Positions 2,980 to 14,129 of a stretch of 43,588 nucleotides of DNA are shown piece by piece. A program made the position numbers and the translations under genes. This stretch comes from Lenisia limosa (lineage: Eukaryota; Protista; Breviatea). The first letter of the stretch is position 1, and each line of letters opens with the position of its first letter. Under the pieces are notes generated by a model, which ran no database searches, was not told the origin of the DNA, and was given only the letters and a program-made list of their open reading frames with translations. The stretch lies in contig LPNZ01003227.1 of assembly GCA_001655205.1 (NCBI GenBank), positions 1 through 43,588 of the forward strand, read 5' to 3'.

Positions 2980-5273
2980 TCACAGACTGAATTGTGTATC
3001 AGCAACCTTGGAAGTCCCGCCAATTGACTTGCAGTAGGCCTTTCCTCCGTTCTTGTTCGTGAAAACAATTCCGTCATTAGCACTTCAAACCTCTGGAACA
3101 ACGAACATGTCATGTGGAATGCATTCAATGTTTGTGTTTCTCAAAACAATATCACTCAATTTGGTGGTCTGAACCAAGGCAATTTCGGAAGATGTCATTG
3201 TAGCCTCGTACCTAATGTTACATACAAGCTAGTAAACCAGAATCTATCACCATTTTTGATTCGATTCATTTGGTCAGAGATAATGGTGGCGAACAGTTCT
3301 CCAATTGCAGCGTCTCCTGAGAAATAAGGTGTTATTTTCAAACCTGAAGGAGTCTCAGCAAGTCCTCCGATAAACAAATCAATATCATCAACATTGGAGT
3401 ATGCAACACTCAAATGGCATGCAACCTTGAGCATTAGATTATGAAAATTAGACTGAAATGAAAATAATCTCAAAGTGGCGCACTTCTTCGTCCCTGGTGA
3501 CTTCAGCGAAGCTAGATTTCCTTCCCAGTCCCATCGCCTCACGAACATCGTTGTAACTTCCAAGTCCTTTTAGGTTACAGAAAAGTTTCCAACCATGGTC
3601 TCTTCCTCGGAAAATATCCAATGAAAACAGATCCAAGCCACGATCACGGCCAAAGAGCATATTACGCATTTCAGTTACTCCATAAGCATCAATCTCCTGT
3701 TCAACCTGGACAGAAATACCTGAAATCAATAAGGAGAGGAGGCGTGCAAACCTCTTAACAGCGGTTCAATTCCTCCTTCGGTCATGACCTTGAAAGGGTT
3801 CTGGAGGTAAGGTCCAGCCATTCCAGGAGTAATTTGAAAAAACCCTCACTTACAAAGAAACCATCTGCAAAACTTAAGTGTCCTTCTTTGATCATTTTCC
3901 ATTTGGAATCCAGTCGCAACATTTCGTGATTAACTTCACTATGCCCATATCTGAAATGTCACGATGTTGACCTTTTACCTGAAAGCTGCATGACTAAATT
4001 CATTCGCAATAGTGGGTTCCAGAGTACTATCATAGGTGTATCCCTTTTTATGGAATGAACCCAAAAGGACGGGAAGATATTCACGATCAGTGATTGATTG
4101 CATAAAAGCAATAACCCATCTGAAAGGTAAATAGGAAACTGAAGGCTCACCGTCTGGCTTCTTGAAAAACTTGCTCATCACTCCAATTTGAATTGGCAGT
4201 TTTGATCTTATAAGATAAATAAATCAAGGAGCTCCTCCCTTCCAACCTGCTTGGCCAGCCTGTTATGTTCTCTCACAAAAAGTGCATGGAAAGCAACCAG
4301 TAGTGGGTTTTCATTGCCTCGTACATCCCCAGTTGCAAGAAGACTTGTCACCGGTTTTTCTATTCTGTGAGTTACCACACTTCTTACGCATTGGATTGGC
4401 CATACTAACCCCAAGTGTGTTAAATGGAGGAAACTCTCCAGTTGGCAATACCTAGAAGTGTGACTAGCGGTTTCACCCCAAACAATTGATTTGAGAAGAC
4501 CATCTCTCATAGTGCGAAGAGAGTCACAACGTGCTTCATCACTATTGGAAATTAACAAATTACATTTACAAACCTTCCATAAACAAAAGAAGCATCAAGC
4601 CACGCTGATACGACAGAAGGCTGTTCTCTTGGGTTAGACTTGGAGTTCCCAGTGCCTTTGACAAAAGCAGAGCGGTCAGTATGCATTTTAACTTCGCAAG
4701 TATTGGAAGGGTCCTCGAAGGTCAAAAGACGAAAAACTCACAAAATGAATGTCCCCACATGGAACTTGCAGAACAGCACCTTCATCTTTGGAACCGGGGG
4801 TCAGGTCAAGGTTATGATCCACAACCTGTCCCCATATCATAACAACATCCTGGAGGAGGAGTCAGTCAAACTCAAAAATGAATAAAACCATATTTATCCC
4901 AGCTCAACATACACCCACCCCCAAGCAAACAGAAAGCAGTTTTGAGCTTGGGCGAGACATGTGCTGGGCGCTGACAATATTGGAAATCATTCGCTCAGAA
5001 GGCCGACCTTTTCCGCCAGGAGTTGAGATACCTGGAGGCGACCAGTCATGGCATAAAAATCACGCAAACCGTCATCATAATGATACCCTGCATGGCGAAT
5101 CAGAGGGTTTCCGGCCTTTCCCCATTCATCATTTTCCTCATTATTTCCAGTTCCATTGTAGGAATAAAAACCTGAAATATTAGTCCCGTGTATTCAAGCA
5201 GAAACACACTCTTTGCCAAAATTGTTGGAGAGAGAAGAGTGACAAGAAGTAGGAAACGGAGTATCATTCTCAT
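2980..5273 (-). CDS. Secreted haem peroxidase of the peroxidase-cyclooxygenase (animal haem peroxidase) superfamily
   Basis: Signal peptide MRMILRFLLLVTLLSPTILA, then SYNGTGNN...WGKAGNPLIR, distal WGQVVDHNLDLT, SAWLDASFVYG, GDVRGNENPLL, FVREHNRLA, proximal NEFSHAAFRYGHS, DIFRGRDHG, DIDLFIGGLAE and IKNGDRFWF. Multiple short introns; the last exon is tentative. Confidence 0.93.
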
Positions 5274-5760
5274 CAAGAAATAATACACAGAGAGAGCAGG
5301 TCTTCAGTTCGTATGTATGTTCACTGTAAAAAACCCGACGTTTTTCATTTTTGACTTTAAGTAAACAGTTGCCTTATTTGGAAAAAGACACTGAGCCGTA
5401 CCGGGCGCGTTAAAAACTCTGGCACGCTTCCACTGTTCTGACCAGCTCTTACGCTCTTGCAAGCTCAAGACTCTTAAGAATTATTATTAACAAATACATT
5501 TTAGTTAGAAACTTAGAAAAGAGAACTTCTGGTGATAATAGAGAAGGAATAGCATTATTCAATCCAGTCAAATTTTTTTATCTTCGTGAGTTATATTTTT
5601 GCTTTTGTTGAAACAAGTGAGAAACACAAAACGCAGCGTATACAGTTCTCGTAAGTAATTAATGTAAAATATAGAAATAAATTATCAAATAAAAACTGAC
5701 TATGATCAAATAGCCCCCTCTAAGAGCGTAAGATCCGTATCTTCCAAAAGATAGTCAGAT

Positions 5761-8700
5761 ATGGCTTCTATATCTGGAACTAACCATGGGAAGTCAAGAG
5801 GACAGCTTTCTAACTCTCTTGAAGAGGTAAGCCTTTTTACTGAAGTGCGCTGTTCATCAATTGCCGGGTCGACAAAGCTTAATACTCTTTAGGGGATGTT
5901 CTCTGTGCTTTATACTATGGTAAAAGGTGGCTGGGGTTAAGTTAAAATCTCTTCTATTACCTTATCCACGAGGTCACCACGCTTATTAAGTTTATAAACT
6001 TATAATTTCAGATAATCCGCTCTCTTTTCCGCAATTTGTGCTGTACATTTTTGTGAACAGTTTTTTCCAATGGACTGCTTTCTCCTTCAATGGAGTCCCT
6101 TGGGGAATTGGTGAGTATCAGTTGGGAATGTAATTCAGTAACTGTGGCGGTTTTACTTTTCGAGTCTGGCTATGATCATACATGGGCAATATACTTTGAA
6201 ATTATCATGGCAAGCAGTCCCTTCACACTTTTTAGGTGATCGACCGACAAATTTCTTTACCTTCTTCCAATTACCAATTTTTTGGATGTCGAACCAAACC
6301 TCATATCTCTTGACATATTCAGTCGTATTCCTCACCATTGCGGTTTGTGGATCCATTTGAAGACTGAATAACTCTCTAGCTTTCATTTGTATGTGCCTTA
6401 TACGTTATCCAAGCCTTCCAAAAAGATCGGTTTAAATACGTGTTCCCTCTTCGGGCACTGAGAATTCTTGTTTTCATTCTGGTATGATAGCGAATGCTAT
6501 GAACTCACACACAGGTAACCATTCTTTACATCCCGGTTTCTAAGCTGCTGCTGGTTTGTTTAAAGTGTGAGAATCTCAACGGACAACTTGTTATGTGGGT
6601 CATCAATGACCAAAGCTTGACTGACTTAACAGGACAATGTTCCCTGACGCGAAGTGTTGGGAGTGGCCAATGATTGTGCCTGAAATCCTCACAATCGTTA
6701 TCCTCCCGCTCTTCTTTCCTGTCGCTGTACTAGTCCGTCTTGTGTACTTCCAAACAAACCCCAAAAAAGGCAACCCCCTTGCAAGGTCGTCTGGTCGGCT
6801 TGATGCTCAACAGCTTGTCTTTGTGTCCGTCCTGGTTGTTGTCTACACTCTCATTGATGGGTAGGCGTTTGACTAGCCTGGTGGCAATTCTTACCAACAG
6901 TTATTCCACTGAAAAGGCCTGCTTTCTGACTGCTGTTAATCTCCATCTCTTCCGAGCCTACTATAACGCCATGCCTTACTACGTTACCCGAACAAACCGC
7001 ATCAAGTGAGTTGAGTCACATTGGTTAACGCCGCAGACTTGGCTTTCAATTGAGTCAAACAGTGACTTCACTCCTCTCAATTGTGGTCATCCAGTTCAAC
7101 TCCAATGACGAATTCACTTATTGGTATGTGCCTCTTCACTCCTTCTCACTGTAAAAGGTTCGCAGTGCTGTGGCTCTTTTTGCTCTTCCCTTCCCTTTGG
7201 TTTGGTCATAAACTTGCCGACATTCGTTTGAAACGAGCTGAGAAGCGCTGGCTTGGAACAATGCAGTTCTCTAGGGTTGGGTGGTCTAGTTCGTGTTCTC
7301 ATTCTTCAGTTCTACAAAGACCCAACAGTCGTGTCTACAAATGCCGAGTTGGGAGCTGAGGCGGCGACAGAGTCATCGTAGGTCGTCAAATTCGCTTCTG
7401 ACTCCCCAGAGCCGCAACGGAGTCGCCTAGAGAGAACTTGGATTCTCCTGAACAAATGCGGAACCCTTCTTATACCACGCCACTGAGGCAAACCGTTGTA
7501 TGTCATAGTGTGGTCATCTAATCGTTGTTCAGCCTGATGACGCGAGCGTGGCGTCGCACCCGTTTTCGACCCATTCGGCAATGGTGGATCATACGCAAAT
7601 GGTAGACAATGGCTTATGCTTATTGCTTTAGTCCGAGGCGGTAATGGACGGATACATTCAAGACGCCTACACTTCCAGTGATGAATCAGATCATGATCCT
7701 CTCCAGGCTTACCTCGTAGGCCGCCTTTCCCTGTTTCTGATTATCAGGATAATGGTTTTCTTGAGGATGCAGACCCGCCCCCTATCTTCGGCTCCGAAAC
7801 AGACATTGATGTGGCGTGTCGCCTTGTGATTCACCGAATGCGTTTGTTTTGGCAACACTATGCCCTTTAATGTTTTAGGCCCTCCATACATTGCGATGGC
7901 GCTTGCTCATGCCACCGATCTTTACGAAGAAGGGTGCAAGCTCTTCAAGTCGAGTGCTTGGGTCCGTATTATTTATAGTCACTTCCTGGTATGTGGGTAG
8001 ACTATATAAGAAATTCTAAAGATAGCATGCCGTTTTTTTACGCTTCAGGTGTTCTACATGAAGGACCCGCTTGAGGCCAGAGCTCAGGTGAGGAGGAGTG
8101 GCCTGGTTTTATTGACTTTTCCCAGATTTCGGCTGCAAAAACAATGTCTCCGTTTATTGATTGTCGGTTTTTCATCTTCATGAGAGAGAAAGATTGGGCT
8201 CTGGAGAGTTTGGCACATGAGGGTGGAGGTGACATTATCAACAGTGTGGAGTTCCAGTCTAATTATGAACAGGTAAGAGTTAATCTAGACCTGGTGGGTT
8301 TTATCCTTCAAGGCAGTTTCTCAGCACAACGCTGCTCTTTCGAATATTCGCCTCTTTTGGACGACACTCCTTCCGAAGCATGTAGCTTTGGAGCAATTGC
8401 CCGCCCTCGCCCAAAAGATTAACCTCACACAACGGAGGGCTGGAACAATTTGTACGTGTTCTTCACTCTATTTAGTTTTCTGATTTTGTAGACGCCAAAC
8501 TCGTTTCAAATCACCCAAACAATCGCTCTCTTCTCCGCAAATATGCCCACTTCCTTATGTATGTGCAAAATGAGCCAGATGCTGCCGCGTATTACTTCGA
8601 TAAAGCCGAAGAACTGGAGGTTGGCTGTACTGCATTTAGTCATTGTGTAGGACAACGATAGGGAAGGACGAACAAAATCCTTCATCACTCGAGACACAGT

Positions 8701-11700
8701 AATCCGAAAGTAGGGTGATGCTGATGTTGGTGACGCTTTAGATTATCCCGTGCTGGCAGAGACTCACCTGCTATTGACAAGTAAGAAAAGTCGTTTTTGT
8801 GACATTTCAGGTCGGATGGAGAGAGTGTTGGGGACGGTATCCACCAGAGTCACAGTGGACTCAGTGTCAAAGACATGGAAGACAATAACCTTGAGAAGAA
8901 CTCGATGAGAAGCTCTGGACGAAGGTCAAGCGGTAGGAGTGCCTTTTGTTTTGCAGTGTAATTTCGCAGGTGGTACACAGAAGAGCGGTGGTAACACAAG
9001 TCATCAACGGCGCAAGCAGTACCGTGAGAATGTTCTCAGTCGCAAGTCTACAGCAAAACATATTCTTGAACTAACAATTGTCGTCTCCATGGCCCTTCTT
9101 CTTCTTCTTCACGCTCTTTTCTTCATTTTCATTGATATGGAGTATCGATCTCTTTCGGTGAGTGCCTTTTTTTATACAATATCATATTTCTGTTTTTGTT
9201 TTTTATTATTTACCTTGTCTACTATGCAATTACCATTCAGAATGTTTACGATAACATTGAGAAGTCCTGTGACCGCCCCTATTTAGTTCAGAGTCTTGCC
9301 ACACATGTAAGTTCGGTGTAGTTGTTCTGACTTTCAGACCCGTCGAATGGAAACAGCAGCGCTGGCAGGAATGGACAAAAGCGCTCGAGGCCTTCTTGAT
9401 GATGAAGATGAACCCTTGGTGGAGTCCCATTACTCAGTTTCTATTTCTGATCTCTATTCCGACATTCACAAAGAGAGGGATGATTACGTAAGTCAGGTAT
9501 TGCTGTTGTCTCACCACTAGGCTCTGACAAGACGTGAGCTGGAGCCTGGACTGCCAACGTCTGAGAATGAGGGTCTTACACTGCTTATGGCGGGTACTGC
9601 CTTCACTAGAGTGAGTTGCTTCAATCTACTCAAGGTCATTACATATCTTTTTGCAGTAAGTCTCTACTGAAACTAGGATCATAGAGATCCGGCGGTTGTC
9701 TGTACACATAGAAAAACACCCACATATCGATATCGATCTGGTACTTTTTTCTTGCAATTTACCCCCCCCCCCCCNNNNNNNNNNNNNNNNNNNNNNNNNN
9801 NNNNNNNNNNNNNNNNNNNNNNNNNNNNNNNNNNNNNNNNNNNACCCATCGCAACCTTCTTCTTGGCGACAGCTCCACAACAGTAACGTCAAGTGCGATT
9901 GACGCTCTTTGGGAGACTCCTTTTGTTTGGGTATGCATGGTGATGTGTTTATGTCGTCTCATGTTCCAGGTTCGTAAGCCAATTGGGTCATCTACAGCAC
10001 CCACTTTTCCCCTGGGCGACACGAAAACTGGATGGGCTGCGGCCGCCGACCTCGAGCTGCTGAATCTCTGGGACGCAGGACATGAGCTCATCCAACATGT
10101 TGAAGTCGTGGCAGCCCTCCCGCACCCCCTCTCGTCTACTAATGTAACTGCCCGCAGTTTGGAGGCCTGGATGCAGCCAAGCAACTCCCCGCCTTTCTTT
10201 CCTTATTCACCTTCTTCTATTGGGCAACATGCAGACACGTGGTTTACCTTCGCTAACACCAACAACATTACGGACGCTTTCATTGTAGCATCTTATCTCT
10301 ACCAAGATATCGCCGAAGGAGTGAGTCTTTCACGTCATTGATTGTTCTAGATTTTGGACACGGCAGTCACAACCGCTTATGTCGTTTTTACTGTTACCAT
10401 TTTCCTTCTTCTGTCAATCACTATGGTTGTGTTCCGCCCAGTCTTTGCGAAGGTAGAGTTGTATTGTCTTTCTTCTCACCCGCAGATCCACAACGAGAGA
10501 ACCGCCGTGCTGCAGCTTTTCTTGGCTATTCCCAAGAAGGTCGTTTACGTCCTCGGCAAATCCGTGAAGGTGAGCAAGGTGCTGTTTTTTTGACCCGCAG
10601 GACCATGAGTTCAGCGGAGATAGCGACGCCGGTTCTCAAAACGATGAAGACGACATGCAGGATCAGGCTGCTCTACAAAAGGCTCAGGTTTGCTGATGAT
10701 TTTGTTTGTGTGGTTTGGTTAACTTAACAGGAGGCAAGTGGGCTGGTCCAAGAAAGTCAACAAAACAACCAAAAAGACCCACTGCGCCATTTGAACGCCA
10801 AAAACTTCTGCGCTTTCCTTCTCCTTATCCTTGCTGTTATTGGAGCCCTCTTAACTTCACTGTACTTCCACGCGCAGCTCAATGGGATCCACAGGGAAAT
10901 CACTGCAATCGGCCGGCAGCGTGTTGCGGTGTCAAGGTTTGCAAGGGATATTGATGACGCTTCAGAATTGCTATGCTATCGCAGGAGATGATCCGCAATG
11001 AGCGGTCCGCTTGGTTGGAAGAAACTTCAATTGAAGACCTTCTCAAAAACGAAACCGCTCTATTCGATGTATGCTTCTCACTCACTTTTTTACTTCTCAG
11101 AATCTGGTAATGGACTTGAAATGGGGTCTCAACGATCTTCCCGGCTACATTGATCGGTCAACTTCTCTGGATAATCTCCTTTTTGCCACCGGTTTGCCTA
11201 ACGAGGCCATTGACCCCCCAGGTGAATGTGCCGTTTCTGCGTCTTCAAGCATTATTTCGCTATGTAACGACTACGACGGTCTCTTGGCCCTGTCAGACAC
11301 CTTCACACGACACTCCGAGTCTCTCCTCGTCATGATGACCACTGAAAAGGTTGGACTATGGGTTCCTGGGCATGTCTTGCATGCCAACTCAAATTTCTCA
11401 TTGGTGATATTGATATCATTCTAATCCGAGACAACCCCGAATCCTTAACTTTCCAGAACTCAAGCAGATGGTTAACTGACACTTCTGCCCAATTCCCTGG
11501 AATAGCAGCCCGTCTGGACCAATTGATCATCGAATCAGAGATCCTTGCTAGTGGCCTTCTGGAAGGTTAGGCTTTCATTTTCTTCTTAACACTTTAGCAA
11601 TGAGCATCGTTCAATCATACTCGCGGTCGAATGTTTCAATGCATTCAACTTACCAAGGCTTCTGCATTGGCAGTCATTTTGTTTTCATCATTTCAATCTA

Positions 11701-12997
11701 CTGTGAGCACTTTTGGGGGAGGTTTGTCACCTTTCAGTGTTGTTCTTCCGACGTATGTTCCAACGGTTGAGAGACGAGCGGACCTACACCTCCACCATGC
11801 TTCTTATGATTCCGCAGCAGACGATCCAAGAGGTTAGTGCCTCTTCATCAGACGAAATTCATGGTTTAGGTTGCTGAGATTCGGCAATATTTCGAAAACG
11901 GCATGATTAAGGTTGGCTCCACACTCAGTTCAAATATTCTGCCGAACTGCCAATGTTCACGTAACTTTTTAGCAACGTGATGTTGAACAAAAACTGATCG
12001 AGAAAGTTCCCATGTTCGCTAACTCGTCACCAAAGTTTACTTCGGCGCTTGCTTCGAAACTCAAAATCAAAGTAGGAGGACAACAATGGAGGTGTGGCTT
12101 ACTTTTTCAGGTTTATCCTTCGAATATGAACATTATCATATGCTTCAGGTTTATCCTTCGAATATGAACATTATCACATGCTTCAGGTTTATCCTTCGAA
12201 TATGAACATTATCACATGCTTCAGGTTTATCCTTCGAATTTGAACATTATCACATGCTTCAGGTTTATCCTTCGAATATGAACATTATCACATGCTTCAG
12301 GTTTATCCTTCGAATATGAACATTATCACTTGCGGCGAAATCGGAGACGCTATGTACTTCTTGGTCAAGGGCTTTGTTGAAGTGGAATTACCAAATGGAA
12401 TTGGTAAGCGTTTTAGAGTTAGGGACAATAATGTTCCAGTTGTGGCTACTATGCAGCCTGGAGCCTTCTTCGGAGAAATCGCCTTGTTGACAGGGTCTCC
12501 TCGAACGGCCACAATCCGAACAAAAATGATCAGTGACGTGTTGGTGTTGTCGCGCTCTCACTTTAACAAAGTGCTCAAGAAGTTCCCACAGCATCATGAA
12601 GGTTTGTTTCATACTGAAAGTTATGTTTTGACCTCTGCAGAGTTCACTCAAATTGCAAATGAGTACAAAATCAGAGACATCAAGAAGAAGGAAGAGGAAG
12701 ACAAAAAGAAACAGGATGCAGAAGAAAAACGACTGAAAGAAGAGCAGGAAAGAGAAGAGTTGAAGAAAAAGCATGAAGAAGAGAGGGCTGCCCAGGGTCT
12801 CCCCCCGAAGAAGGCAACAATCGGTGGAGAAGTAGGTCCTTTTGGTGCTGGTCCAAATGACGCTCAAGGTTGAGATCCCGATCTCCCCAAGCATGACTCC
12901 AGTTCCTTCTGCTGTCAATGTGGACAACCAGGAGGATTTCAGCGAAGAAGAAGAAATCGAAGATGACAACGATGAGGAATATGAGGAGGAAGAGTAG
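5761..12997 (+). CDS. TmcB/TmcC (tiny macrocysts)-like large multipass membrane protein with a C-terminal cyclic-nucleotide-binding domain
   Basis: Spliced model: MASISGT...LEE|GMFSVLYTM; VFPLRALR; LYIPVSKLLLVCLKC; FPDAKCW; NPLARSSGRLD; MPYYVTRTN; SETDIDVACRL; YEEGCKLFKSSAWVRIIYSHFL; DCRFFIFMREK; VEFQSNYE; IRLFWTTLL; HPNNRSLLRKYAHFL; ERTAVLQLFLAIPKKVV; RDERTYTSTMLLMIP. These match my recollection of the TmcB-like family pattern. A CNBD follows (KVPMF...GEIGDAMYFLVKGFVEV...GAFFGEIALLTGSPRTATI) with a KE-rich and acidic tail. Over 25 short introns; one N-gap. Confidence 0.82.
12106..12333 (+). repeat. Tandem array of 6 x 38 bp spanning an intron/exon junction
   Basis: Unit ttcaggtttatccttcgaatatgaacattatcac(a/t)tgc, period 38. 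Single substitutions in copies 1 and 4; the last copy (cacttgc) is the coding one. Confidence 0.97.
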
Positions 12998-13351
12998 GTG
13001 CTTCTTTCTTTTGGGTTTTGCTTTTTCCAGTATTTTTGACGGCTTTCAGAGTCACGCCTACTCCACCGCGGAAAATAAGAAGAAATTCGTAGGCTTAGAT
13101 CCAACAGGGCCTATTCGGATGGTTATGTTCTCACATCTCAGCCCGCCACCCCCCAGCCGCGGCCGCCTTGATCCTGTTGCCTCGTCACATTCCAACAATC
13201 TCAGAAAACCAGCGCTGCCAAAGTTTGTCCAGACTGTTTTTTTTTTCCTCTTTTTTTTTTTTTTCACTTTTTAGAATCAGTAAGCGAGACCANNNNNNNN
13301 NNNNNNNNNNNNNNNNNNNNNNNNNNNNNNNNNNNNNNNNNNNNNNNNNNN

Positions 13352-13967
13352 GATCAGCGAATAACACCACCGACGATGGTAAACAGCTCTATGGCTCAAC
13401 TTATTCTTTTAGACGATAACAAGCACGACACACATCCCATCAACTATCGAACACGGTTTGTCCTTCTGACAGTCTTCTTACATTGAAGAGAGTCAAGAGA
13501 ATCGCTCCATTCGCGACACTCCCGGAGATCTCGAACAATGTCAAGGTCGTCAGCTCTCTCGAGTCGAAGCCCTTCCCCAAGTGGTTCCGAACAGACTTTT
13601 GACTCCAACAACAACTCACCGTATGCCAGTGGTTGTTCTCTTTATTTTACGGGACAGACGTCAAATGTCAAGCGTGAACCCTCCGTTCAAGTCGTTCAGC
13701 ACTGCACCGACGCCCAAATCTGACGGCAAAACTGAGGTAGTCAGCTCTCCCGTTAATTTTATCCCGGCCTCTTCGTTGTTGACGGTTCAGGCTGTTACGC
13801 TTGATATGGCGCTCCTGAACAACGCTTTTGACGAGCTGCCGCGATCCAACAGCAGCACCACGGGATTGTTGGTTTCTCATTGTTCCTCACCCTCCAGACC
13901 GTCGCATGTTGGTAAACAGTTGACGGCGCGTTCGGTGAGGAATTCGCCAAAGAATTCGCCAAGATAG
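13352..13967 (+). CDS. Ser/Arg-rich, probably disordered hypothetical protein (3' part; 5' end in or before the N-gap, possibly ATG 13119)
   Basis: Four successive GT-AG introns keep one frame open: ANNTTDD|DDNKHD...RT|RESRESLHSR...NNNS|PRQMSSV...KTE|AVTLDMALL...NSPKNSPR*. No family recognised. Confidence 0.6.
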
Positions 13968-14129
13968 GAGGTATTGTAGGTTTATGTGGTATTATTGCTG
14001 TCCTCTGTGTGAGAGGCTTAATGAGTCATTGTTGTAATATATCTTACTTGAATTATTTAAACAACCACCGTTATGAATTGTACTTTTAAACTATCTACTT
14101 TACAATTGACCTGGAACCATGGTAGTACT

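What the first reader, a model, noticed from the sequence alone, without database searches (positions are those of the whole stretch)
5761..12997. TmcB-like multipass receptor with no detectable PAS domain, fused to a channel-type cNMP-binding domain
Seen: N-terminal TM block, TPR-like helical region, a short Ser/Gly linker, further TM and luminal blocks, the typical family terminus (ERTYTSTMLLMIP...IRQYF), then an intact CNBD (FGEIALL...PRTAT) and an acidic tail. No S4 voltage sensor or GYG pore was found. Established: TmcB/C-like proteins are poorly understood protist membrane proteins that often carry PAS domains; the phosphate-binding cassette Gly-Glu/Arg binds cNMP, and Thr after Arg favours cGMP in PKG and CNG channels. 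Inference: a candidate new class of membrane cAMP/cGMP sensor or receptor. I do not recall this architecture but cannot confirm that it is novel.
Basis: partly seen in the sequence, partly recalled or inferred. Interest (0 to 1): 0.72.

Follow-up and report, generated by a model that had tools for sequence, protein, structure and literature searches.

The report
TmcB-family membrane receptor ending in cNMP-binding domain
A protist gene encodes a large multi-pass membrane protein of the little-studied TmcB family that ends in a cAMP/cGMP-binding domain, where some relatives carry a PAS domain or a PAS domain plus a cyclase, so it may be a membrane receptor controlled from inside the cell by cyclic nucleotides.

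Summary
The + strand at 5761-12997 carries one intron-rich gene. My model has 43 exons, 1639 aa and only GT..AG introns, median 37 nt.

- **Family:** Pfam finds TPR_TmcB and cNMP_binding. A profile of 25 TmcB relatives aligns to residues 12-1410.
- **Domain position:** the cNMP-binding domain (CNBD) starts about 5 residues after the conserved family terminus (EIRQYFENG). Chytrid homologues end 2-12 residues after that point.
- **Single transcript:** one spliced polyA-RNA contig joins the terminus exons to the CNBD exons.
- **Assembly gap:** the gap at 9775-9843 lies beside a poly-C run and a dispersed repeat, inside a probable intron. A DNA contig bridges it.
- **PAS:** none found, exon by exon, in the joined model or in any frame.
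- **"Channel-type" CNBD:** not supported. PKA/PKG-type and channel CNBDs score alike.
- **Relatives:** some carry PAS, or PAS plus a cyclase, at the same C-terminal position. None of about 30 relatives seen carries a CNBD, but sampling was thin, so novelty is unproven.
- **Fold:** a homologue's core shows two extracellular four-helix bundles resembling bacterial chemoreceptor sensor domains.

Best reading: a receptor-like TmcB protein modulated by cAMP/cGMP. This is a new variant of known kinds.

The parts
5761..12997 (+). Whole coding region of the TmcB-CNBD gene. The model has 43 exons and 1639 aa, with 42 GT..AG introns of 29-359 nt (median 37).
   Evidence: Profile-guided spliced alignment with nine RNA-confirmed introns fixed. 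The 5' third rests on homology and splice-site rules only.
5761..7275 (+). N-terminal multi-TM block, about 6-7 helices, residues about 1-325.
   Evidence: Alignment to N-termini of 14 homologues with conserved motifs (FSVLYxMV, LRxL..YIP, GRxD, PYY..N). Hydropathy.
7748..8619 (+). Cytosolic helical/TPR region containing the Pfam TPR_TmcB domain, which spans exons 8126-8272, 8313-8451 and 8492-8619.
   Evidence: Pfam PF25474 E 3.6e-8 and two exons matching. tblastn with homologues. Own-genome scan.
8620..9061 (+). Ser/Gly/Arg-rich low-complexity linker. Exon boundaries here are the least certain.
   Evidence: Model sequence. No homology support.
9077..9133 (+). TM helix opening the first extracytoplasmic block.
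   Evidence: Hydropathy 2.87. The exon is covered by RNA contig record 1.
9611..9969 (+). Probable intron holding a dispersed repeat (9648-9724), a poly-C run and the assembly gap (9775-9843).
   Evidence: Phase-0 GTGAGT..TTCCAG joins the flanking exons in frame.
10378..10545 (+). TM helix closing block 1, then the first juxtamembrane motif NERTAVLQLFLAIPKKVV. An in-frame 33-nt intron lies at 10453-10485.
   Evidence: Homologues lack the 11 residues of that intron and share the motif.
10806..10862 (+). TM helix opening the second extracytoplasmic block.
   Evidence: Hydropathy 2.71.
11657..11911 (+). Last TM helix and the conserved family terminus (DERTYTSTMLLMIPQQTIQEVAEIRQYFENG).
   Evidence: Conserved in chytrid, Cyanophora and Phalansterium homologues. 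Exons joined by RNA contig record 2.
11973..12680 (+). Cyclic nucleotide-binding domain, residues about 1415-1545, in four exons (11973-12071, 12301-12403, 12440-12601, 12641-...).
   Evidence: Pfam PF00027 E 1.1e-16. PDB CNBD hits. All four introns here are RNA-confirmed. Spliced translation.
12072..12300 (+). 229-nt intron containing a 38-bp x 6 tandem array that repeats the 3' splice site and the exon start.
   Evidence: TRF. RNA contig skips 12072-12300.
12681..12994 (+). Charged Lys/Glu helix and acidic C-terminal tail. A 37-nt intron lies at 12832-12868.

Best explanation
The gene encodes a receptor-like multi-pass membrane protein of the TmcB family.

**Anatomy, N- to C-terminus:**
1. 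An N-terminal bundle of about seven TM helices.
2. A cytosolic TPR_TmcB domain.
3. Two tandem modules of the form 'TM helix - extracellular helical bundle - TM helix - ER..IP juxtamembrane motif'.
4. A complete cyclic nucleotide-binding domain placed directly after the family's normal C-terminus, followed by a charged helix and an acidic tail.

**Topology:** four TM helices lie between the TPR domain and the CNBD, so both face the cytosol.

**Proposed mechanism:**
- cAMP or cGMP binds the CNBD.
- The conformational change passes through the short conserved juxtamembrane segment into the last TM helix and the core.
- This tunes whatever the core does: ligand sensing through its extracellular bundles, and output through the TPR domain or the N-terminal TM bundle.
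- In relatives the same position carries PAS, or PAS plus a nucleotide cyclase. In this member a cNMP-reading module stands there instead.

**Shown:** gene structure around the junction, single spliced RNA, family membership, intact binding cassette, absence of PAS.

**Inferred:** topology, four-helix-bundle ectodomains (seen in a homologue's predicted structure), ligand binding and allosteric coupling.
For: - **Single transcript:** one spliced RNA contig (459 nt) runs 11738-11830 | 11870-11911 | 11973-12071 | 12301-12403 | 12440-12512. The first CNBD exon also lies on the same DNA contig as the TmcB core, 9670-12135.
- **Domains:** Pfam finds TPR_TmcB and cNMP_binding.
- **Family profile:** it covers residues 12-1410 of the model at 505 bits. 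This score is inflated because the model was fitted to the same profile.
- **Independent homology:** tblastn and MAFFT support for the N-block, TPR, TM core and terminus.
- **C-terminal addition:** chytrid homologues end 2-12 residues after EIK(R/K)F(I/V)ESG. In Phalansterium P0170, PAS (1331-1443) and Guanylate_cyc follow the same motif.
- **CNBD completeness:** Gly-Glu and Arg-Thr are present in FGEIALLTGSPRTAT, and all helices and strands are there.
- **Predicted structure:** the C-core of homologue P0134 (pLDDT 70) has four 60-80-residue helices running from the membrane into helical bundles. The best VIA matches are the NasR NIT domain (Z 15.4, 266 residues aligned, spanning both bundles), chemoreceptor ligand-binding domains (PcaY, Tsr, Tar, PilJ) and sensor-kinase sensor domains, at Z 13-15.
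- **Literature:** Dictyostelium tmcB is described as acting in or regulating the cAMP pathway (PMC8516963, PMC12750705).
Against: - No binding or functional data exist for any family member's core.
- The structure was predicted for a chytrid homologue, not for this protein, from a shallow alignment.
- Z 13-15 is only just above what helical bundles reach by chance, according to the tool's own note.
- The N-terminal TM bundle has no recognisable fold match, so the output is unknown.
- RNA contigs cover only about 18% of the sampled words, so the 5' two-thirds of the model are not RNA-verified.
- I could not confirm that this genome's own TmcB paralogues carry cyclases. TmcB and cyclase matches fall on different, mostly small contigs.
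Confidence: 0.6

Rival explanations
1. It is a cyclic nucleotide-gated ion channel or transporter of a new type. The N-terminal TM bundle, or the oligomerised TM core, forms a conduction path, and the C-terminal CNBD gates it as in HCN/CNG/MloK1 channels or the sperm exchanger SLC9C1.
For: - The CNBD sits directly after the last TM helix, as in those proteins.
- Bacterial channel CNBDs are among the sequence hits.
- Weak Foldseek rows include TTYH, SOS1 and SLC9C1.
Against: - There is no GYG/GFG filter and no S4-like motif.
- Those Foldseek rows are non-significant: E 0.015-0.35, TM-score about 0.1-0.2.
- The C-core looks like receptor sensor modules, not a pore.
- Relatives attach PAS or cyclase domains, which is typical of receptors.
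Confidence: 0.18
2. The CNBD is a structural or dimerisation module that no longer binds nucleotide. The protein works like any other TmcB-family member.
For: - Many eukaryotic CNBD-like domains (KCNH, SOS1) do not bind cNMP (my own knowledge).
- No binding data exist here.
Against: The phosphate-binding cassette keeps Gly-Glu and Arg-Thr-Ala, and the whole domain scores 61 bits against Pfam even when read through two introns.
Confidence: 0.15
3. The fusion is an artefact: two neighbouring genes or a misjoin at the 38-bp tandem array, with the CNBD exons forming a separate transcript.
For: Short-read DNA contigs break inside the 38-bp array at 12106-12333.
Against: - The spliced RNA contig crosses both the terminus-to-CNBD junction and the 229-nt intron with the array.
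- The first CNBD exon (helix A and strand 1) is on the same DNA contig as the TmcB core.
- All junctions are in frame.
Confidence: 0.03

Closest known systems
TmcB/TmcC family (Dictyostelium tiny macrocysts proteins; Pfam TPR_TmcB PF25474), e.g. Spizellomyces SPPG_00879 (P0134) and Cyanophora P0149/P0126
   Same: N-terminal TM block, TPR_TmcB domain, two TM-loop-TM modules with ER..IP motifs, and the terminus EI(R/K)xF/YxE(S/N)G.
   Different: Those proteins end 2-12 residues after the terminus motif. This one continues with a CNBD, a charged helix and an acidic tail, about 230 more residues.
TmcB-PAS-cyclase proteins (Phalansterium solitarium P0170) and TmcB-PAS proteins (P0171; Chlamydomonas CHLRE_08g373200v5, P0165)
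   Same: The same scaffold. In P0170 and P0171 a cytosolic signalling module is attached right after the last juxtamembrane motif. They are also linked to cyclic nucleotide signalling.
   Different: They carry PAS with or without Guanylate_cyc, which makes cNMP. This protein carries a CNBD, which reads cNMP, and has no PAS. In P0165 the PAS domain lies just after the TPR domain instead.
Membrane proteins with a C-terminal CNBD: HCN/CNG/KAT channels, bacterial MloK1 and SthK, sperm Na+/H+ exchanger SLC9C1
   Same: The CNBD follows the last TM helix. The cassette residues are canonical, and CNBD sequence similarity is 33-44 bits.
   Different: The TM core is unrelated. There is no pore loop, no voltage-sensor motif and no NHE fold.
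Bacterial chemoreceptor and sensor-kinase four-helix-bundle sensor domains (4HB_MCP, NIT, PilJ, NarX/Q type)
   Same: TM - helical bundle - TM topology, and a fold match of the homologue's ectodomains at Z 13-15.4.
   Different: No sequence similarity (4-14% identity). Two bundles sit in tandem in one chain, in a eukaryote, and there is no HAMP, kinase or MCP signalling domain.

Membership tests
TmcB/TmcC family (Pfam PF25474 TPR_TmcB) | TPR_TmcB domain above the Pfam gathering score | tested here: met
   33.8 bits against a cut-off of 27 on a single exon covering profile positions 79-119. A second exon also matches. The own-genome scan gives 30.9 bits.
TmcB/TmcC family (Pfam PF25474 TPR_TmcB) | Multi-TM block N-terminal to the TPR domain, with the family's conserved motifs | tested here: met
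   tblastn and MAFFT alignment with 14 homologues. Exon-level hits down to E about 1e-7.
TmcB/TmcC family (Pfam PF25474 TPR_TmcB) | C-terminal core with two TM-loop-TM modules and the ER..IP / EIxxFxESG terminus | tested here: met
   The family profile aligns to residues 687-1410 at 154 bits, though the model was fitted to that profile.
Cyclic nucleotide-binding domain (Pfam PF00027) | Domain score above the gathering threshold | tested here: met
   61 bits against a cut-off of 27.5, E 1.1e-16. 61.8 bits in the genome scan.
Cyclic nucleotide-binding domain (Pfam PF00027) | Phosphate-binding cassette with Gly-Glu and Arg | tested here: met
   FGEIALLTGSPRTAT in the RNA-confirmed spliced sequence, aligned to PKA/PKG cassettes.
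Cyclic nucleotide-binding domain (Pfam PF00027) | Actual binding of cAMP or cGMP | not testable with these tools
   Needs ITC or a fluorescent-analogue assay on the expressed domain.
Cyclic nucleotide-gated / HCN-type channels | Pore loop with selectivity filter and S1-S6 architecture (S4 Arg repeats in HCN) | tested here: not met
   No GYG/GFG and no (R/K)xx repeat in the 1639-aa model. No ion-channel Pfam hit on any exon. No significant fold match of the homologue's TM parts.
PAS-containing TmcB subgroup | PAS domain after the TPR domain or after the last TM helix | tested here: not met
   No PAS family at E<=1 on 38 exons. A PAS profile built from the relatives' own PAS domains finds nothing in the joined model at E<=100. 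In any frame of 5000-14000 the best E is 6.7. The control finds all four PAS-bearing relatives at E<=1e-40. The linker after the TPR domain is low-complexity, and only about 5 residues separate the family terminus from the CNBD.
Bacterial-type four-helix-bundle sensor domains | Four-helix bundle between two TM helices | tested here: inconclusive
   Seen only in the AlphaFold model of homologue P0134 (pLDDT 70) with VIA Z 13-15.4. It was not folded for this protein because a spliced model could not be submitted.

The most novel reading that the evidence does not exclude
TmcB-family proteins are eukaryotic chemoreceptor-like receptors, with two extracellular four-helix-bundle sensors, that are wired to cyclic nucleotide signalling. 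This breviate member would be a previously undescribed class of membrane cNMP receptor. A C-terminal CNBD feeds the intracellular cAMP/cGMP level back onto the receptor core, possibly in mixed complexes with cyclase-bearing paralogues. No counterpart would be annotated in other organisms.
Probability: 0.3. Interest if true: 0.75.

Novelty: new variant of a known kind. Interest (0 to 1): 0.55.

Why it matters
**Gap in current knowledge.** By my own knowledge, the established eukaryotic cAMP/cGMP effectors are PKA, PKG, Epac, CNG/HCN-type channels and a few exchangers. A TmcB-family receptor ending in an intact CNBD would add a different kind of membrane effector, and it sits in a deep-branching lineage (Breviatea, per earlier scan notes).

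**A testable handle on the family.** TmcB is known only from a Dictyostelium sexual-development phenotype tied to cAMP. Three observations now point the same way:
- Some relatives end in PAS plus a cyclase.
- This member ends in a CNBD.
- A homologue's core resembles tandem chemoreceptor sensor domains.

Together they suggest that the family couples extracellular sensing to cyclic nucleotide signalling.

**If the architecture turns out to be common** in protist proteomes, the finding is an ordinary family variant. The fold observation would then be the more useful result.

Tried and rejected
**Gene models**
- **First ab initio models:** rejected. They skipped homology-supported exons and missed in-frame introns. 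The profile-guided model replaced them.
- **Reading an exon through the gap (9712-9930):** rejected. The real gap is about 47 nt, not 69, which shifts the frame into a stop at 9884. The left flank is also a dispersed repeat.

**Searches for relatives**
- **Single-exon searches of the own genome for paralogues:** only self-hits.
- **Big profile search with a 48-column TPR exon profile:** mostly HAT/TPR splicing-type proteins. Only about 7 of the 150 listed were TmcB family (6 of them long).
- **Word-based searches:** 17, 2 and 3 hits. This is too few for an architecture census.
- **Atlas searches:** TmcB fragments, TmcB+PAS and PAS+cyclase clusters. No CNBD combination appeared, which is weak negative evidence.

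**Other tests**
- **Contig coincidence of TmcB, CNBD and cyclase matches in this genome:** no overlap apart from this gene. I could confirm neither a second TmcB-CNBD gene nor the TmcB-cyclase paralogues noted by earlier first readers.
- **Origin of the CNBD from the genome's PKA-R-like gene:** rejected as a recent event, at 31% identity.
- **Fold searches of the N-terminal block:** nothing above the helical background. The block was not tested as a single domain.
- **Literature:** no paper on TmcB plus CNBD in the library.

Those were run exon by exon by reference. The joined model was used only in local scripts.
Full report
**What is there**

The + strand between 5761 and 12997 has no long ORF. 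It holds many short stop-free pieces typical of an intron-rich eukaryotic gene. Pfam finds TPR_TmcB on 8476-8658 (E 3.6e-8) and cNMP_binding on 12244-12870 (E 1.1e-16). Earlier notes of this scan assign the genome to the breviate Lenisia limosa. I did not test that. The run metadata (2016, polyA metatranscriptome) are compatible with it.

**One transcript**

Contigs of a polyA RNA-seq run (X1) laid on 7101-13100 show nine GT..AG joints. One 459-nt RNA contig links five pieces in order: 11738-11830, 11870-11911, 11973-12071, 12301-12403 and 12440-12512.
- The first two pieces encode the family terminus (DERTYTSTMLLMIP, EIRQYFENG).
- The last three encode the CNBD.

A second RNA contig continues through 12515-12601, 12641-12831 and into 12869 onward. 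This puts the acidic tail in frame. The first CNBD exon also lies on the same DNA contig as the TmcB core (9670-12135). The fusion therefore does not depend on the scaffold join across the 38-bp x 6 array at 12106-12333.

**The gap**

- The 69 N at 9775-9843 are bridged by a DNA contig with 22 fewer letters.
- To the left lie a poly-C run and, at 9648-9724, a dispersed repeat. That repeat has 41 matches at 84-95% identity and 227 first-look candidates in the genome.
- A phase-0 intron 9611-9969 joins the neighbouring exons in frame.
- Reading through the gap would hit a stop at 9884 once the true gap length is used.
- I conclude that the gap is intronic.

**Gene model**

I therefore fetched relatives with a profile of the TPR exon from this gene and three paralogous loci. 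Most hits were HAT/TPR proteins. Seven single- or double-stretch hits, six of them long, proved to be TmcB family:
- Chytrids: Spizellomyces SPPG_00879 and others.
- The glaucophyte Cyanophora.

From 25 relatives I built a profile. I ran my own profile-to-genome spliced alignment with a codon model and the nine confirmed introns fixed. After merging the gap intron, the model has these features:
- 43 exons and 1639 aa.
- All introns GT..AG, 32 of 42 between 29 and 40 nt.

The 3' third is largely RNA-verified. The rest rests on homology and splice rules.

**Architecture**

| Residues | Feature |
|---|---|
| 1-325 | Multi-TM block with family motifs |
| about 454-665 | Helical/TPR_TmcB region |
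| 665-765 | Ser/Gly/Arg linker |
| 773-791 | TM helix |
| 792-1027 | Loop block 1 |
| 1028-1046 | TM helix, followed by NERTAVLQLFLAIPKK |
| 1071-1134 | Acidic loop |
| 1135-1153 | TM helix |
| 1154-1351 | Loop block 2 |
| 1352-1370 | TM helix, followed by DERTYTSTMLLMIP...EIRQYFENG (to about 1410) |
| 1415-1545 | CNBD |
| 1546-1639 | Lys/Glu helix and acidic tail |

Four TM helices separate the TPR domain from the CNBD, so both are on the same side, presumably the cytosol. Chytrid homologues stop 2-12 residues after the terminus motif. In Phalansterium P0170 a PAS domain and a nucleotide cyclase follow the same motif. The CNBD is therefore a C-terminal addition at the site where that relative carries a signalling module.

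**No PAS**

- Pfam on 38 exons gives only cNMP_binding and TPR_TmcB, with no PAS at E<=1.
- I built a PAS profile from the PAS domains of TmcB relatives. It recovers those relatives at E<=1e-40.
- The same profile finds nothing in the joined model, and nothing in any frame of 5000-14000 on either strand.

**The CNBD**

The spliced domain has helix A, the beta roll, the cassette FGEIALLTGSPRTAT and helices B and C. Against PDB sequences the scores are:
- 78 bits summed over five repeats for a Toxoplasma multi-CNBD protein.
- 44-53 bits for PKA-R and PKG.
- 41-44 bits for MloK1 and SthK.
- 33-39 bits for HCN.

It is therefore not specifically channel-type. It is 31% identical to this genome's PKA-R-like CNBD. 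Nucleotide preference cannot be read from Arg-Thr alone.

**What the core looks like**

AlphaFold models of homologue P0134 gave pLDDT 79 for the N-block plus TPR and pLDDT 70 for the C-core.
- **C-core:** four helices of 60-80 residues run from the membrane into two helical bundles. The best structural matches are the NIT domain of NasR (Z 15.4, 266 residues, spanning both bundles) and ligand-binding domains of bacterial chemoreceptors and sensor kinases (Z 13-15). This is only just above the level that helical bundles reach by chance. The shared TM-bundle-TM topology makes the resemblance plausible.
- **N-terminal TM bundle:** no convincing match.

**Context**

- This genome has at least seven TmcB-like loci, nine CNBD matches and at least 27 cyclase matches. 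Only this gene combines TmcB and CNBD.
- A Chlamydomonas TmcB-related protein was listed among methylated cilia proteins (PMC11244166).

**Verdict**

The most likely reading is a receptor-like TmcB protein whose activity is modulated by cAMP/cGMP through its C-terminal CNBD. A new kind of cNMP-gated channel or transporter is the main rival. Among about 30 relatives and clusters seen, none has a CNBD. My sampling was too thin to call the architecture new, and a direct two-domain census is the decisive missing step.

Noticed in passing
window 12106-12333: A 38-bp x 6 tandem array inside the 229-nt intron repeats the 3' splice site and the first about 30 nt of the next exon. The RNA contig uses only the last AG (12300). 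Upstream copies would run into a stop. Already noted by the scan (s1-215683).
   Followed up: partly
window 9648-9724: End of a dispersed repeat. It has 41 matches at 84-95% identity and 227 first-look candidates across the genome, and many copies sit at contig ends. Here it lies in an intron next to a poly-C run and an assembly gap, and it probably causes assembly breaks genome-wide.
   Followed up: partly
window 10453-10485, 12404-12439, 12602-12640: In-frame, stop-free introns of 33-39 nt that ORF-based reading takes for coding sequence. Two are RNA-confirmed. The third is inferred because all homologues lack those 11 residues.
   Followed up: yes
window 5761-12997 (all introns): All nine RNA-confirmed and all 33 modelled introns end in AG and are at least 29 nt long. 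Earlier notes on this genome describe many 21-26-nt introns ending in TG. My scoring penalised non-AG ends, so only the nine confirmed introns are evidence.
   Followed up: no
window 10378-10545 and 11657-11832; homologues P0134 and P0170: The TmcB core is an internal duplication. It has two modules of TM helix, extracellular helical bundle and TM helix, each followed by an E(R/Q)..(L/M)..(I/V)P motif.
   Followed up: partly
P0170 (Phalansterium solitarium); Atlas clusters: TmcB scaffolds with a C-terminal PAS plus nucleotide cyclase exist in Amoebozoa. Large PAS-cyclase clusters of 1200-1560 aa, some from Parabasalia, have similar features. TmcB-type cores may underlie many protist 'receptor cyclases'.
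   Followed up: partly
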